A DNA stretch of 64,000 bases from Magallana gigas (taxonomy: Eukaryota), in NCBI RefSeq assembly GCF_963853765.1, contig NC_088855.1, positions 48,484,001 through 48,548,000 of the forward strand, read 5' to 3'. Positions 15,794 to 21,600 of the stretch are shown here, one piece after another. How positions within the stretch are numbered: the stretch's first letter is position 1; each line of letters opens with the position of its first letter. Under the pieces are notes generated by a model. The model was not told where the DNA came from. It made no database searches and worked only from the letters and a program-made list of their open reading frames with translations. The position numbers were made by a program, and so were the translations under genes.

Positions 15794-16997
15794 TTAATAT
15801 CGCCCAAGTCGAACAGAAATCGATTGCAAGATGTGGCCACATTTAGAGGCAAGTTATATCGCGATTTTTTTTTTTTTTAGAGGATAGTGAGTTGGTACGC
15901 TTCAGATGTGACTTAAAAACAACACGAAAAAAGTATGAACTACCTGGGGTTTGATTTGAATTAGGGTTACACAAACAAATACACTACACATATGAAAGCG
16001 CAGATGCATGTGAATGATGGAAAAATACTACTAGTATATTGTATGTCTTGGAGATATAATTGAAGATTAACCATATTTTATGAGAAAATAAAAAACCCTG
16101 TGTGATGTAATGCCAAAGTGTACCCAGGTGGACACAAACGTGTGAGTGTGCTGGTCCCAACACTGACGATGGCTGACAGACACTTGACTTGTTATAAAAC
16201 AGGACCACAATCACACACTCCTCCTCGTGTGTCCCGCGGCTTTTAATTATTCATGTTAAAGATTATTCAAAAACACGATTTATTTTTAAATCCCTAATAA
16301 AATCAAAATTTACAGAATATCGGACAGTGGAGTTTGTCAGGTAAGCTTCTAAAATAAATCAGATAAAATAAAACTCAGAAATGAAATACTCTTGGATGAT
16401 ATGCATGCAGGTAGTGTAATAATTGGAACGTTTTATTACGGCTGTGTAGCTCCCAGTAGATAGCAGTCCTCGAGTGCATAGATTAATTAACCAAGGAATT
16501 GTTACCCTAATGAAATGAAGAAGTTTATTACGTAATATATCATAAATGTATGGAACGCCACATTTGTCTTATGTGGTTATTTCATTAGAAGATTGTGCTT
16601 TATTATATAAAGATGGTGCTTCATTAATAAAAATAAATAATAAAAAGTAAGAAAAATTAACTAAATTATTCTTAATGTAAATCAGTGCGTTAGATAAAAG
16701 AAACAACCAAATGGTCTTCTATAGGAATTTGATTCTAACATCAGCATGATTATTTCTAGCTGCAACCTCTCCCGGTTTTTTTTCTCCAGTAAACATCAGA
16801 CATAAAAAAATCGGAGAGGGCTTCAGTATTGCATCTAGATTATTTTGTACAGCTATGATTGTACATTCAATTTCCGTAAGAACGCCTGATAGATGTGAAT
16901 ATATTTCAATGAATTGTTAAAGTGTCATGTTTTATCAACATGCACGTGTTTACTGTTATAAGTCACTGATTCCCCTTAATTTAAAGTGATAATTTCA

Positions 16998-18116
16998 ATT
17001 GTTATACTTTCATGTTAAATACTGAAATCTGATTGGTTAAGACGCAGTTAATAATATTTACTATTACCCTCAGCGTTAGCAACGCACTTGGCAACGGGTA
17101 ACATTATATAAATAGTGCCTGTTTGGGAGGGTAACAGTTGAAATTGACACCCCGAGAAAACCATTGTCAACCGACGCGAAGCGGAGGTTGACAATGGTTT
17201 TCGAGGGGTGTCAATTTCAACTGTTATCCTCCCAAACAGGCACTATTTATTTTGTTATACTGAATGTCTTTTTAAAAATTTTTAAGAAAATTTTACTGCT
17301 TTTATATAGGAATAACGTGAATTCTACAGCGAACCGTACGCGCATAATTTTCGCGCATGTAACATTTTTTAATGTTACCCGTTGCCAAGTGCGTTGCTAA
17401 CGCTGAGGGTAATAGTAAATATTATTAACTGCGTCTTAACCAATCAGATTTCAGTATTTAACATGAAAGTATAACAATATATAAATAGTGCCTGTTTGGG
17501 AGGGTAACAGTTGAAATTGACACCCCGAGAAAACCATTGTCAACCGACGCGAAGCGGAGGTTGACAATGGTTTTCGAGGGGTGTCAATTTCAACTGTTAT
17601 CCTCCCAAACAGGCACTATTTATTTTGTTATACTGAATGTCTTGTTAAAAATTTTTAAGAAAATTTTACTGCTTTTATATAGGAATAACGTGAATTCTAC
17701 AGCGAACCGTACGCGCATAATTTTCGCGCATGTAACATTTTTTAATGTTACCCGTTGCCAAGTGCGTTGCTAACGCTGAGGGTAATAGTAAATATTATTA
17801 ACTGCGTCTTAACCAATCAGATTTCAGTATTTAACATGAAAGTATAACAATAAAAAATGTTACATGCGCGAAAATTATGCGCGTACGGTTCGCTGTAGAA
17901 TTCACGTTATTCCTATATAAAAGCAGTAAAATTTTCTTAAAAATTTTTAACAAGACATTCAGTATAACAAAATAAATAGTGCCTGTTTGGGAGGATAACA
18001 GTTGAAATTGACACCCCTCGAAAACCATTGTCAACCTCCGCTTCGCGTCGGTTGACAATGGTTTTCTCGGGGTGTCAATTTCAACTGTTACCCTCCCAAA
18101 CAGGCACTATTTATAT
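16998..18116. mobile_element. Composite of three near-identical copies of a 373-bp non-coding element with a 143-bp terminal hairpin (two forward copies nested in one inverted copy)
   Basis: Segments a(16998-17105) - B(17108-17250) - C(17251-17370) - a'(17371-17478) - B(17481-17623) - C(17624-17743) - a'(17744-17851) - C'(17852-17971) - B'(17972-18114). B has 65-bp arms (62/65 paired) around a GCGAAGC loop. Confidence 0.88.
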
Positions 18117-18606
18117 AGTGGCATTTTTAAATCATGTATGGGGAAAGAAGTCGTCGAGCGGATAAGGCGATATCAATTGATAAAATAGTAAATTGTCAGA
18201 CTGAACTTATGACCTTAGCTGGCAAAAATAGAATTCTTAATGTCTTTTCTAACCACAAACTATTATTTAGTAGAGAAAAATTCGAGTATTATATTTATTT
18301 TCTTGTTGAGCAGTTCGGAAGTTACTATAGAAATCGATATATCATTTTCATCGTTGAATTACATTTATTGCTACAAAAAAGGAAGTCTGTCAAGCTAGAG
18401 ATATTTTTATGAATATTGATACCACCTGTAACCACGGATATTGCTCAAAATCGTTGTCGATGGATTAGTGTAAAATATACATACCGATATACGTATATGT
18501 ACTATTTATAATATCTATATATTTTTGTGTTGCGTGAACTCCTGTTCGACCATTGTTTTCTTTAAAATTCACAAGTCATGACACCTTTTGCTTGGTCTGG
18601 CAGAAT

Positions 18607-21600
18607 ATGGTTGCCATTCTTGATGTAGACAGAGGATACGCTTGGGTGATTTTGGGAGGTAACACAGTCCTTTTTAGTCCTCTGTTCGATTATCTTTATA
18701 TAAAAAATGACATCCCTATCACCATCACCCACCAACATACTTACGTGTCATTCTCTCTCTGCGTTTTCTCCCATGTATTACACACCGGTATATTGGTATA
18801 ATGATGTGTATCTATATTATCCCTAAAAATATATGAAATTGATACATGTACCTCATAAATTATGTCTGTTACTGCTACCTATATCAGTTTTGTACTGCAT
18901 TTATTACTGGATTCAAGTGAAACAAGAGGCCTACAGGTCTTATCGCTCACATGGGGGTTAATCCAATTACACCTTAATTCAAAGTAGCTCAACACACTTG
19001 AAATAGTTTCTCAAATCAGCAGAAAAATACTTGATTATGATAGATAACATGTAGCAGAAGAAATATACAAGTAAAAAACAGCAAAAGAAATACGCAGTTT
19101 TGGATTTTAAACAAAAATTTAATTCAGTAAATTTAAACAAAACCCTCAGACGGATTCGAATTGCTGACCTGCGAATTACAAGCCTGATACTATAACCACT
19201 GATCCATGATGATATTAAACCAAATCAATGGATACAACAATTCAACAAAACATTGCCATCATGTGACGCTGTGTCTTAAAAAAGTATGTCTTGATGTCTT
19301 GGGCTACCTTAAAGTCCTTTTATTTAGGAATGCTTTTTGGTTGACCATGTGATTCTTGAAAAAAGTCACAAACTGACAGACGTTAGTTAACATGTGATCA
19401 GAAAAACTGATTGAATTTTCAGCTCAGGTGAGCTATAAAGGGTCGGGTTAAAAAAATAATAACGAGATTGATAAAAACTAATAGTGTATCTATTATTTGT
19501 AATCTTTGTATCACAGTATCTTCATGTAACTCGCAGTGACTTGTAATACTGCTAACTTGTTCCCTACTGTAATTGGGACAGATATAGACTATATATTCAT
19601 GTTATCTAACTCTGCTTACTTCCTTACAAGTACAATACGCATGCGTTGTCGTTTGACTTGTTGTTTAAGCATGAAAATACACAGAACAAAAACGCCTTTT
19701 ATAGATTTTCTTTTGACCAAAATTATTTATATCTAAACAATAGAATGCTTTCTTTGGTAATTCATGCGGGAATGAAGGTAGCGACATTGCAGAAATAATA
19801 CATAACCCACGTTGACTAGCAGGTTATGTATTTTTTCTCAAATGATCGCTACCTTCATATTTTGCATGAATAATCAAAGACAGCATTTTATTGCATTTAT
19901 TGTAATAAACTATTGAATTAATCAAAAGTAGAAGGTAAAAGTAAGTGGATTGTTGTTCATGTACATCGGAACGCTGGATAAAAGAAATAGCAAAACCTTC
20001 GTATATGAGAATTTGAGTTTGGCATCATCAAGTTTTATTTTTGGTACAGTCCGTGATTTTTCTTACGTTGCTGAAGGTTTCGACCAATTGATAAACGATC
20101 GTGTAGATTTTAGCCCTGTCAGTTTCTATAGAGCTGTGAATTACAATCGGTTTTCTCTTGAAATGTAGGGAAAAAATACACAGGGGATGTAAAAATTCAT
20201 ATGTATACATAGTCTTCACTTCCTAACTCCTTAATCTCAGTAAATGTATGTTTTCATCTGTCTATCAATGTTCTAACTTACCTAAATGAAAGTCTTACCC
20301 TATTCTTTTTTTCAATCACTACCATGACTATGCACTTCCATGTTACGGCTGTTATTTTGTTTTTCCAGCTTGCTTCTTTATGTACATGCTGTTGCTGGGT
20401 TCCATCAAGTCTTTTGGAATCTTGTACTCGGAGATTTTGCTGACGACTGACAATGGAGCGGGGAGCACCGCACTGATCGGGAGTTCCGCCGGCTTCATCC
20501 AGTCACTGACCGGTAATAGAGCGCCGTAACTACTTAACTCCATCCCATGTTATTGTTCCCAGCAATTTTCACGATTTTTAAGAAGTACAATTGGAAGCGA
20601 TGAGAGAGATAAAATACAAGATTTCTTAATTGACACTTCTTTTATCTTTACCCGGATAAGTCCACACGAACAAACAAAAATTTCTTTAGGAGATTTATAA
20701 TGGGAAAAACTGACATCTTTTATCATTCGAAAGTCACTTGGATCACTTCACACAATTTTTCAACGTTATCATCCGGGTACTTTCATGGCAATGCAAATTC
20801 CTATTAGCTGATACACTCTAGGGGGGGGGGGGTTAAAGGGACTTGGACACGATTTGAGATCAAAAAAAATTATTTTTATTTTTTATGTATAAACTGGTTT
20901 ACTGGTGAATTTAAATGATTAATCAAAATATTGAATGTTAAAGTCAAGTTACAAACGAGATACAGAGGTAAGAATTGATTGTTATGTAAACAAAGCTCGA
21001 GTCTTATAGTTGTTTACAAAAAAATGAAATGTAGAGAATTACCATTTCTTTGACAAAATGACATGTAAACAACAATTCAAACTAACTCAATATCTCATAA
21101 ATACTATTATCAATAAAAGAAAGTTACATTTAATTGAAACTTACGCCAATACAACACATATGTAAAAAATGACAATATTCGAGTTTTGTTTACAAAACAA
21201 AGAATTATGAACTCCGTATCTTGCCTATAACTTGACATTTGGCTTTCAAATTTTGACATGATATTATAAACTTCTATATTTATCAATATAAACATTGAAA
21301 AGGGAAAAATAAATTTTGAAAATTTAAAGTCAAATCGTGTCTAAGTCCCTTTAAAGGGTCAAAAATTGTTTTTTCGATTTTAATGTTTACAATGCTTTAG
21401 TAAGGCATTTGGCCAAAATTTGAGTGTCATTTGATGAGTCGTAAGCGAGTTACAGAGCTTACAATTTTTCGCTGTGTAAACAAAGCGTTTGTTTACATTT
21501 TGAATGTTGAAGTGAAAATTCCAGTTTAAGACCTAAAATGAATGTGTTAATCGTTAGGAACTGTCATTTATGCTTAAAATGGATAATAAGATAGACAAAC

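What the first reader, a model, noticed from the sequence alone, without database searches (positions are those of the whole stretch)
16998..18116. Hairpin-capped element inserted as a head-to-tail dimer into an inverted copy of itself
Seen: define unit U (373 bp) = 143-bp hairpin + 120-bp spacer + 108-bp tail. The locus is one reverse copy of U split exactly at its spacer/tail junction, with two forward U copies in between. That junction is the loop of a small palindrome, GTAACATT-TTTT-AATGTTAC. The copies differ by about 1 base, so the event is very recent. There is no TSD and no TIR enclosing U. The hairpin apex is the exceptionally stable GCGAAGC mini-loop. Inference: precise tandem dimers without a TSD point to a circular or rolling-circle intermediate (tyrosine-recombinase Crypton-like or Helitron-like mobilisation) with self-targeting at an internal palindrome. 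The composite could extrude several cruciforms, about 0.5 kb upstream of SLC16 exon 1b.
Basis: partly seen in the sequence, partly recalled or inferred. Interest (0 to 1): 0.72.

Follow-up and report, generated by a model that had tools for sequence, protein, structure and literature searches.

The report
Self-targeting hairpin transposon nest in oyster
The locus is a real, very recent pile-up of three copies of a small, non-coding, hairpin-ended jumping gene of an oyster. The element inserts without duplicating its target at a short mirror-symmetric site that it also carries inside itself and rebuilds at its own end, which explains both the nesting and the head-to-tail dimer.

Summary
Window 16999-18117 (1119 bp = 3 x 373) is one inverted 373-bp unit split at its internal small palindrome by two forward units in tandem. 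The rejoined outer unit is identical to inner copy 2, and inner copy 1 differs by one base.

- **Insertion polymorphism.** Contigs from two other oyster read sets join 16997/8 directly to 18117/8, so the whole composite is absent there. That empty site holds no TA, so there is no target-site duplication.
- **Copy number.** The unit has about 3,360 copies in the genome. I counted 87 head-to-tail junctions and 141 insertions into the same internal site (131 inverted, 10 direct).
- **Target.** 78 independent flanks give an asymmetric insertion point in a symmetric motif: TNAYAN | TATAWW | ATRTNA. The unit's own palindrome (GTAACAT|TAAAAA ATGTTAC) is a perfect instance. Its 3' end (TAACAA) rebuilds the left half-site after insertion.
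- **Layout.** A terminal 10-bp repeat, its inverted partner, then a 143-bp stem-loop. This is the layout of non-autonomous Helentron/Helitron2 (HLE2, HINE) elements. Intact Helentron enzymes are abundant in this genome, but I found no partner sharing the termini.

My best reading is a new variant of HINE with a giant end hairpin and site-specific self-homing (confidence 0.6). A tyrosine-recombinase mechanism is not excluded. Other reports of this scan describe what appears to be the same or a related family on other DNA.

The parts
16999..17104 (-). Outer (host) unit, tail part: unit positions 268-373 read on the minus strand. It starts with the terminal repeat TTGTTATACT (16999-17008) and ends with GTAACAT, the left arm of the split small palindrome (17098-17104).
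   Evidence: Rejoined with 17851-18117 it gives a 373-bp unit identical to inner unit 2.
17105..17477 (+). Inner unit 1 (373 bp: TATATAAATAG...GTATAACAA). One private base at unit position 167 (window 17271, T instead of G).
17478..17850 (+). Inner unit 2 (373 bp), head-to-tail with unit 1. The junction reads AACAA|TATATAAATAG.
17851..18117 (-). Outer (host) unit, hairpin plus spacer part (unit positions 1-267 on the minus strand). It begins with TAAAAAATGTTAC, the rest of the split small palindrome.
17108..17250 (+). 143-nt end stem-loop of unit 1. The two other copies are at 17481-17623 (+) and 17972-18114 (-). The tip is GCGAAGC (17176-17182) with two tandem GA/GA mismatches in the stem.
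   Evidence: single-strand DNA fold -84.8 kcal/mol, z = -20
17252..17261 (+). Internal 10-bp repeat TTGTTATACT just after the stem-loop. It pairs with the terminal AGTATAACAA at 17468-17477. The same pair occurs at 17625-17634 / 17841-17850 and, inverted, at 16999-17008 / 17961-17970.
   Evidence: 85 of 92 copies are perfect. The 3 copies ending AATAA all carry A instead of G at the third position of the partner; only one of them (TTATTATACT) stays fully paired.
17359..17378 (+). Intact internal small palindrome GTAACATT-TTTT-AATGTTAC of unit 1 (unit 2: 17732-17751). This is the family's preferred insertion site.
16998..18118 (.). Insertion boundaries. In the empty allele, base 16997/16998 is joined directly to 18117/18118 and reads ...TAATTTCAA|GTGGCATTT...
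   Evidence: table 8: X16 record 11 and X5 record 18 run across the joint without extra letters.

Best explanation
The 373-bp unit is a very young, non-coding DNA transposon with about 3,400 copies and the architecture of non-autonomous Helitron-like-2 elements (Helentron/Helitron2 type, 'HINE').

**Layout.** Read on the reverse strand it has a terminal 10-bp repeat (TTGTTATACT), its inverted partner (AGTATAACAA) about 220 bp further on, then a 143-nt stem-loop and a 2-nt tail.

**Insertion.** It inserts with no target duplication at one fixed phosphodiester: the left edge of the 6-bp AT-rich spacer of a symmetric motif, TNAYAN | TATAWW | ATRTNA. Only one product form is ever seen, which points to a single-strand cut-and-join. 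I infer that a Rep/helicase (HUH) enzyme of one of the many intact Helentrons does this, probably through a single-stranded or circular intermediate. In such an intermediate the two 10-bp repeats would extend the hairpin and leave the joint in a small bubble.

**How this locus formed.** The element's own small palindrome is the best target in the genome, and its 3' end TAACAA recreates the left half-site after insertion. So copies home into each other, mostly inverted, and next to each other, head to tail. The window locus would then have formed by one insertion at the genomic site, a second into the first copy's palindrome, and a third at the regenerated site.

**Shown:** boundaries, no TSD, the target motif, the hot spot, polymorphism.
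**Inferred:** the enzyme class, the intermediate, and stepwise rather than one-step origin.
For: **Empty allele and element length**
- The empty allele in two other read sets shows a clean 1119-bp (3 x 373) insertion, and the empty site has no TA.

**Flanks**
- On the hairpin side the flank is always ...A-N-TA (A at -4 in 77/78, TA in 78/78, Y at -5 in 78/78).
- After AACAA the flank is TA in only 48/78.
- L057 shows insertion at AACAT|TTTTT, where the TA is not host sequence.
- Distant positions are constrained: +8 is T in 72/78 and +9 is R in 73/78.
- The arms are mirror-symmetric only at a 6-bp spacing (mean 3.15 of 6 matches against about 1.4 at spacings 0, 2, 5, 7, 10 and 12, and 2.1-2.2 at spacings 4 and 8).

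**Genome-wide counts**
- 3,358 copies, 87 tandem junctions, and 131 inverted plus 10 direct insertions at the internal palindrome.
- The 13:1 orientation bias equals the A:T ratio at target position +2 (61:5).
- The hosts of nested copies differ in age (78-99% identity) and in their private changes, so these are independent events.
- Dimers occur in 9/131 nested sites against 78/3227 elsewhere (Fisher p = 0.006).

**Structure**
- The tandem junction folds into one long hairpin with the 10-bp repeats paired.
- There is one G-to-A / C-to-T change across that pair in an older subfamily.

**Match to the literature and to this genome**
- The layout and the lack of TSD match published HLE2/HINE definitions (PMC4067079, PMC11417382, PMC7492417).
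- A short flank motif such as TNAT| is reported for Helitron2-type FoHeli, which also self-insert (PMC5148889).
- The genome holds at least 150 Helitron_like_N hits. Open frames of 2,600-2,900 aa carry DUF6570, PIF1 and Exo_endo_phos.
Against: - **No autonomous partner.** Two negative-context pattern searches at the ends found nothing (each about 42% sensitive and testing one breakpoint only). Five sampled 10-kb Helentron pieces share nothing with the unit and carry no long hairpin.
- **Short repeats.** The repeats are 10 bp, just under the 11-18 nt usually required.
- **Oversized stem-loop.** It is 143 nt against the usual 10-40.
- **Target dinucleotide.** The host dinucleotide is T|T in only 36/78 sites.
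- **Site shape.** Two inverted half-sites around a 6-bp spacer, cut at the spacer's edge, is also the classic form of a tyrosine-recombinase core site.
- **No intermediate seen.** No circle and no single-stranded intermediate was observed.
- **Locus structure.** The internal structure of this one locus rests on the assembly alone.
Confidence: 0.6

Rival explanations
1. The same element and the same self-targeting, but mobilised by a tyrosine recombinase (Crypton-like, or a CTX-phage/integron-like reaction on a folded single strand). The circle junction TAACAA-TATATA-AATAG would act as an attP-like core and recombine with the look-alike genomic core TNAYAN-TATAWW-ATRTNA.
For: - The target has two inverted half-sites around a 6-bp spacer, and the insertion point is exactly at the spacer's edge.
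- The deduced junction of joined ends mimics the target.
- There is no TSD.
- A long hairpin next to the joint would suit a folded single-strand substrate.
- Another report of this scan on a related family preferred this reading (s1-403227; unchecked).
Against: - Host spacers are often unlike TATATA: only 48/78 begin with TA, and this locus has TTGAAA. A classical two-step exchange needing spacer identity is therefore unlikely.
- A two-strand exchange with heterology should leave half the insertions with the host spacer on the hairpin side. That form was seen in 0 of 92 copies.
- Only a one-strand exchange variant survives these two points.
- The terminal-repeat plus end stem-loop layout is that of HLE2 elements, not of described Cryptons.
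- I did not search for recombinase genes.
Confidence: 0.2
2. The head-to-tail dimer, or the whole 1119-bp composite, arrived in one step. Either a rolling-circle read-through or multimeric circle gave two units at once, or a composite built elsewhere was moved by the intact outer ends.
For: - The three units are nearly identical: 0 and 1 differences.
- No intermediate allele (outer unit only) was seen in the two empty read sets.
- Trimers exist, and at least 8 other loci combine nesting and a dimer.
- Tandem Helitron arrays are attributed to rolling-circle events in the literature (PMC5148889, PMC8268682).
Against: - Read-through should not depend on the target, yet dimers are 3-fold enriched at the best target (p = 0.006).
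- The regenerated site ACAA|TA....ATRT explains them without extra assumptions.
- The expected number of nest-plus-dimer loci from the two separate rates (3358 x 0.04 x 0.07, about 9) equals the number seen.
- The hosts of the two other nests I could read carry different variants from this one.
Confidence: 0.3
3. An ordinary cut-and-paste MITE (Tc1/mariner-like) with a TA target-site duplication. On this reading the tandem and nested copies are chance neighbours.
For: - The unit is flanked by TA on both sides in 48 of 78 copies.
- The TA next to the hairpin is invariant.
Against: - The empty allele has no TA.
- 30 of 78 copies, including very young ones, lack TA on one side while the other side never varies.
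- There are no terminal inverted repeats.
- The junction counts are far above chance, with 0 in the reversed controls.
Confidence: 0.03
4. An assembly artefact: collapsed or mis-joined repeat copies, with a single unit (or none) really present at this locus.
For: - The short-read contigs break inside the repeat, so no read set I laid spans the inner junctions at this locus.
Against: - The inserted length is exactly 3 x 373, with family-typical ends and a family-typical target on both outer flanks.
- The same junction types recur 87 and 131 times on all chromosomes of a 29-contig assembly.
- X15 contigs stop in the element ends, and this run shows no empty-site contig.
Confidence: 0.03

Closest known systems
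HINE / Cg_HINE: non-autonomous Helentrons (HLE2) of the Pacific oyster, mite and Drosophila (DINE-1). Sources: PMC7492417, PMC4067079, PMC11417382.
   Same: - Non-coding and high in copy number.
- No target-site duplication.
- One inverted repeat is terminal and the other subterminal, with a stem-loop between the subterminal repeat and the element's end.
- Insertion is mostly next to T.
- Forms tandem copies and nests.
- Intact Helentron enzymes are present in the same genome.
   Different: - The stem-loop is 143 nt (70-bp stem with a conserved GCGAAGC tip and GA/GA mismatches) instead of about 10-40 nt.
- The repeats are 10 bp.
- It has no microsatellite and no internal tandem-repeat core.
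- The target is a defined 18-bp symmetric motif rather than 'T-rich / TT'.
- It carries that motif inside itself.
- No partner Helentron was identified.
FoHeli1/2, Helitron2-type elements of Fusarium oxysporum (PMC5148889)
   Same: - Asymmetric terminal inverted repeats and end hairpins.
- A short sequence motif on one flank (TNAT|A there, AYAN|TA here).
- Self-insertions giving composite elements.
- Joined ends were detected by PCR there.
   Different: - FoHeli1/2 are autonomous elements of 6-11 kb in a fungus.
- No symmetric second half-site is reported.
- No internal hot spot is reported.
Cryptons (tyrosine-recombinase DNA transposons) and one-strand-exchange integration of folded single strands (CTX phage, integron attC). 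From my own knowledge.
   Same: - No TIRs and no true TSD.
- A core site with inverted half-sites around a short spacer.
- A folded hairpin next to the crossover point.
   Different: - Described Cryptons have no end hairpin or subterminal repeat layout, and no abundant short derivatives of this kind.
- No recombinase gene was linked to this family.
d(GCGAAGC) mini-hairpin (from my own knowledge)
   Same: The hairpin tip carries exactly this heptamer (17176-17182).
   Different: Here it is only the cap of a 70-bp stem. Its role was not tested. Another hairpin family in the fetched loci has the same cap.

Membership tests
HLE2 / Helentron-type non-autonomous element (HINE) | No target-site duplication | tested here: met
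   The empty allele ...TTTCAA|GTGGC... lacks the TA, and the inserted length is exactly 3 x 373. The flanks are asymmetric.
HLE2 / Helentron-type non-autonomous element (HINE) | Short inverted repeats (11-18 nt), one at or near the end and the other subterminal | tested here: inconclusive
   A perfect 10-bp pair, TTGTTATACT / AGTATAACAA, is found in 85/92 copies, with one G-to-A / C-to-T change across it in an older subfamily. This is one base short of the usual lower limit.
HLE2 / Helentron-type non-autonomous element (HINE) | Stem-loop between the subterminal repeat and the element's end | tested here: met
   The 143-nt palindrome starts 2-3 nt after the repeat and ends 2-3 nt from the terminus. 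It is far longer than in described families.
HLE2 / Helentron-type non-autonomous element (HINE) | Insertion between T and T | tested here: inconclusive
   The host dinucleotide is T|T in 36/78 sites and N|T in 58/78. The real determinant is AYAN|TA plus WTR at +7 to +9.
HLE2 / Helentron-type non-autonomous element (HINE) | Autonomous Rep/helicase(/endonuclease) partner sharing the termini | tested here: inconclusive
   Intact Helentron frames are abundant. No element with the unit's ends in another context was found (limited sensitivity). Five sampled pieces are unrelated.
Canonical Helitron (HLE1) | 5' TC, 3' CTRR with a short hairpin about 11 nt from the end, insertion between A and T | tested here: not met
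   The ends are TATATAAATAG... and ...GTATAACAA, and the host dinucleotide is never A|T on the unit's own strand.
Tc1/mariner-type MITE | TA target-site duplication and terminal inverted repeats | tested here: not met
   There is no TA in the empty site, the TA is missing on one side in 30/78 copies, and the two ends are unrelated.
Crypton (tyrosine-recombinase transposon) | Encodes, or depends on, a tyrosine recombinase; no TIR; no true TSD | not tested
   The structural negatives (no TIR, no TSD) are met. I did not search for a recombinase gene. The data allow only a one-strand exchange variant.

The most novel reading that the evidence does not exclude
This would be a eukaryotic transposon family with a defined, mirror-symmetric 18-bp integration site. 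It is cut on one strand at one fixed bond by an enzyme acting on a folded single-strand hairpin substrate: either a Helentron Rep with an origin-like specificity not described before, or a recombinase working like CTX or integron integration. Because the element carries the site internally and rebuilds it at its end, it homes into itself. That would give a direct, testable route from a dispersed transposon to tandem (satellite-like) arrays in oysters.
Probability: 0.3. Interest if true: 0.7.

Novelty: new variant of a known kind. Interest (0 to 1): 0.5.

Why it matters
- **Satellite-like arrays.** Oyster genomes are full of short tandem arrays tied to Helentron-type elements, and how those arrays arise is debated (PMC7492417, PMC8268682). 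This family gives a concrete, countable mechanism. The end of an inserted copy rebuilds its own preferred target, so copies stack head to tail (87 junctions) and nest in each other (141 cases).
- **Target definition.** It also gives an unusually sharp target motif and a proven TSD-free empty site for a Helitron-like element. Targets for this group are usually summarised only as 'TT'.
- **Ongoing activity.** The family is active or was very recently: copies are up to 100% identical, and this locus is present or absent among individuals. That makes the enzyme and the intermediate experimentally reachable.
- **Possible gene effect.** The insertion lies about 0.5 kb upstream of a putative SLC16 first exon, so it is also a candidate regulatory polymorphism. 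I did not test this.

Tried and rejected
1. **TA-TSD MITE reading.** This was my first hypothesis. It is rejected by the flank asymmetry and the empty allele.
2. **H and the rest as two separate TA-flanked MITEs fused together.** I dropped this because the 373-bp unit moves as one piece in nearly every copy sampled, and the 10-bp repeat is better explained as the subterminal partner.
3. **Amplification of one composite as the source of the 131 nested junctions.** Rejected. The hosts range from 78 to 99% identity and carry different private changes.
4. **Rolling-hairpin (head-to-head) replication as the origin of the inverted arrangement.** Rejected. Removing the inner dimer restores an intact 373-bp unit.
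5. **Search for the autonomous partner.** Two negative-context pattern searches found only indel variants, or nothing. Five Helentron pieces showed no similarity and no long hairpin.
6. **Literature.** Four terminal sequence strings occur in no held paper. The Cg_HINE supplement holds none of them apart from one unrelated TTGTTATAC, and its table of substructures is illegible in the stored copy. No 373-bp satellite appears in the C. gigas satellitome paper.
7. **Earlier findings by sequence.** This returned nothing.

Full report
**Observation**

- Tandem Repeats Finder reports a 373-bp period, 2.0 copies and 99% matches at 17099-17852.
- The repeat finder reports 276-nt inverted arms (17475-17750 / 17845-18120, 99%), 114-nt arms (16998-17111 / 17365-17478) and three 143-nt palindromes.
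- The exact parse is: outer inverted unit 16999-17104 plus 17851-18117, inner unit 1 at 17105-17477, inner unit 2 at 17478-17850.
- Rejoining the two outer pieces gives a 373-bp unit identical to inner unit 2. Inner unit 1 differs at one base.
- The split lies in the small palindrome (GTAACAT|TAAAAAATGTTAC on the + strand).
- GCGAAGC sits at the tips of the two forward hairpins (17176-17182 and 17549-17555); 18040-18046 holds the complement GCTTCGC on the + strand.

**The unit is a high-copy, young mobile element**

The window lies on contig C3 of a 564-Mb, 29-contig assembly. An earlier report of this scan on this window calls it an oyster genome.
- A search of the whole assembly gives dozens of copies at 99-100% identity on all large contigs.
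- A 47-mer of the left hairpin arm (up to 2 mismatches) occurs 3,358 times, against 0 for the reversed control.
- I took a sample of 60 exact-match copies in order along contig C1. Their identities run from 83 to 99.7%, most are 98-99.7%, and most are single full-length units.
- The unit has no meaningful open frame.

**Boundaries and the absence of a target duplication**

I compared the flanks of 92 copies, 78 of which have independent genomic flanks.
- On the hairpin side the flank is always ...A-N-T-A. TA is present in 78/78, A at -4 in 77/78, and a pyrimidine at -5 in 78/78.
- On the other side, after ...GTATAACAA, the next two bases are TA in only 48/78. The rest are AA, CA, TG, TC, AC, AT and others, and this includes copies more than 99% identical to the consensus.
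- A true TA duplication cannot be invariant on one side and variable on the other in copies this young.
- L057 has a unit inserted in direct orientation into another unit. The host there reads AACAT|TTTTTAATG, so the TA next to the hairpin is not host sequence.
- The decisive evidence is an empty allele. Contigs of two other read sets from two studies (X16 record 11, 1124 nt; X5 record 18, 1128 nt) lie on 16783/16860-16997 and continue without any extra letter at 18117-18900.
- The empty site reads TAATTTCAA|GTGGCATTT, with a one-base ambiguity from the shared A, and contains no TA. The missing piece is 1119 bp, which is 3 x 373.
- The unit is therefore 373 bp, TATATAAATAG...GTATAACAA, with no TSD, and the whole composite is an insertion polymorphism.
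- X15 contigs stop within the element's ends and show no empty-site contig.
- None of the read sets spans the inner junctions, so the internal order at this locus rests on the assembly.

**Target site**

With the TA assigned to the element, the host site has this consensus:
- Left arm: T(45/78)-N-A(51)-Y(78)-A(77)-N (T 48, G 13, A 9, C 8).
- Then the insertion point.
- Spacer: T(58)-A(61)-T(44)-A(40)-W-W.
- Right arm: W(76)-T(72)-R(73)-T(50)-T(43)-A(48).

The right arm is the reverse complement of the left arm. Complementarity between the two hexamers peaks only at a 6-bp spacing, with a mean of 3.15 of 6 against about 1.4 at spacings 0, 2, 5, 7, 10 and 12, and 2.1-2.2 at spacings 4 and 8. It is therefore a symmetric recognition motif rather than a strong hairpin at each site.

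Insertion is always at the left edge of the spacer, with the hairpin end next to the left arm. The outer unit of this window obeys the motif: TGCCAC|TTGAAA|TTATCA.

**Self-targeting**

The unit's own small palindrome is a perfect instance of the motif, with 8-bp arms: GTAACAT|TAAAAA ATGTTAC.
- The junction 'tail (inverted) | hairpin' occurs 131 times in the genome with up to 1 mismatch.
- The corresponding direct-orientation junction occurs 10 times.
- Together that is 141 of about 3,358 copies (4.2%). In the ordered sample it was 4 of 60.
- The 13:1 orientation bias equals the A:T ratio at target position +2 (61:5). The spacer reads TAAAAA on one strand and TTTTTA on the other.
- Host copies range from 78% to 99% identity, belong to different subfamilies (TTGGCAAC, TTAGCAAC and AACAC variants) and carry different private changes. 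These are repeated independent hits on a hot spot, not the spread of one composite.
- A rough estimate of the preference over an average TA in the genome is several hundred-fold. This is my own arithmetic from the counts.

**Tandem copies**

The head-to-tail junction AACAA|TATATAAATAG occurs 87 times, including trimers.
- The unit's last six bases, TAACAA, fit the left half-site TNAYAN.
- The right half-site of the original target is still 6 bp away after insertion.
- So an inserted copy rebuilds a good target at its own end.
- At least 9 of the 131 nested sites also hold a dimer, by matching coordinates. Elsewhere the figure is 78 of about 3,227 (odds ratio 3.0, p = 0.006).
- That enrichment is expected if dimers arise by re-insertion at a regenerated site, because the hot spot has the best right half-site. 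It is not expected from rolling-circle read-through.
- The product of the two rates predicts about 9 loci like this one, which is what is seen.
- A one-step origin (multimeric intermediate, or movement of a ready-made composite by its intact outer ends) is not excluded. The three units are nearly identical and no intermediate allele was seen.

**Anatomy and family**

The two ends are unrelated, so there are no TIRs.
- The 10 bases right after the hairpin (TTGTTATACT) are the reverse complement of the last 10 bases (AGTATAACAA). The pair is perfect in 85 of 92 copies.
- The three copies of an older subfamily that end in AATAA all have A instead of G at the third position of the partner, though only one of them (TTATTATACT) stays fully paired. 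This is probably a single event, and it fits selection on pairing.
- Folding the tandem junction as single-stranded DNA gives one continuous hairpin at -84.8 kcal/mol (z = -20). In it the two 10-mers extend the 70-bp stem and the joint lies in a small bubble.
- Read on the reverse strand, the unit is: terminal repeat, body, subterminal inverted repeat, stem-loop, 2-nt tail.
- That is the published layout of Helitron-like-2 elements (Helentron/Helitron2) and their non-autonomous HINE derivatives, which also lack TSDs and prefer T|T (PMC4067079, PMC11417382; for the Pacific oyster PMC7492417).
- The mirror layout, with the stem-loop at the 5' end, is also described ('HLE2-reverse'; PMC11417382).
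- Helitron2-type FoHeli elements have a short flank motif (TNAT|A), self-insertions and PCR-detectable joined ends (PMC5148889).
- The genome holds at least 150 Helitron_like_N matches, many in open frames of 2,600-2,900 aa.
- Four sampled frames carry Herpes_teg_N/OTU and DUF6570 upstream of the Rep domain, and PIF1 helicase plus Exo_endo_phos endonuclease downstream. This is the Helentron make-up, and DUF6570 is given as an HLE2 marker in PMC11417382.

**What does not fit, or is missing**

- I could not link the family to a particular autonomous element.
- The repeats are one base shorter than the usual minimum.
- The stem-loop is several times longer than in described HINEs.
- T|T holds for only 36 of 78 sites.
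- The target motif is far more specific than reported for this group.

**Mechanism**

Shown: the element is joined to the host at one fixed bond at the edge of the spacer. The alternative product, with the host spacer on the hairpin side, was seen in 0 of 92 copies, although host spacers often differ from the element's TATATA. A reaction with two staggered exchanges across a heterologous spacer should give both forms. The data therefore point to a single-strand cut-and-join whose product is fixed by replication.

Inferred: the enzyme is a Helentron Rep (HUH) acting on a single-stranded or circular intermediate (0.6). A tyrosine recombinase doing a one-strand exchange on a folded strand would fit the site geometry as well (0.2).

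**Earlier reports of this scan, on other DNA of this genome**

- One report calls a 143-base hairpin the 3' end signal of an abundant Helitron-type element (s1-366424).
- One describes a cap shared by several Helentron hairpin families (s1-359009).
- One, on a related family, describes TSD-free insertion at the edge of a mirror-symmetric AT-rich site and prefers a tyrosine recombinase (s1-403227).

I treat all three as leads. My own data reproduce the hairpin-end and symmetric-site statements, and they leave the enzyme question open.

**Verdict**

My best reading is a new variant of a known kind (HINE) with a giant end hairpin and site-specific self-homing. It is of moderate interest, mainly as a countable route from transposon to tandem array and as an active, polymorphic system in which the mechanism could be tested.

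No N stretches were involved. Read laying was given 2,601 letters.

Noticed in passing
L035:946-1110: A second, unrelated hairpin element of about 160 bp (tip GCGTAGC) sits inside the hairpin of a truncated copy of the unit. The unit sequence does not resume after it within the locus.
   Followed up: no
L036 and L037, reverse strand near position 1384: A third hairpin family (stem at least 65 bp) lies about 116 bp from a unit copy. Its tip, GGCGAG-GCGAAGC-CGAGCC, has the same tandem-GA plus GAA-triloop cap as the unit's hairpin. L036 and L037 are near-identical duplicates of one region.
   Followed up: partly
G000, many places (for example C10:11467812, C7:11823767, C6:3577817, C4:54317917); L091-L094: There are at least 150 Helitron_like_N matches, many in uninterrupted frames of 2,600-2,900 aa. 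These carry Herpes_teg_N/OTU, DUF6570, Rep, PIF1 and Exo_endo_phos, so they are apparently intact Helentrons. They belong to several families that are unrelated at the DNA level.
   Followed up: partly
window 16735-16821: Another short repeat with inverted ends (CCTCTCCCGG...CGGAGAGG) lies just upstream of the composite. Contig depth there is 60-100 times that of the flanks in three read sets.
   Followed up: no
window 16881 and 16441-16801, 18284-18852: The empty-allele individuals also differ from the reference by a 13-bp insertion after 16881 (X5) and several single-base differences. The filled and empty alleles therefore sit on different haplotypes.
   Followed up: no
window 18553-18801: An open frame here contains ...DRGYAWVILGG..., which looks like the start of a monocarboxylate-transporter (SLC16) first exon (judged from memory of the family). 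I did not check the gene model.
   Followed up: no
G000 C2:38115915-38116700, C3:47110460-47111600, C6:3055568-3055861: Judged by junction coordinates alone, these loci combine inverted nesting, direct nesting and tandem junctions of the same family within 1-2 kb, so they are multi-layer nests.
   Followed up: no
L042, L078, L055, L061: Older copies have often lost one hairpin arm or the tip (palindrome instability). They nonetheless keep the GTAACA...TGTTAC stem of the internal small palindrome with different loops.
   Followed up: partly
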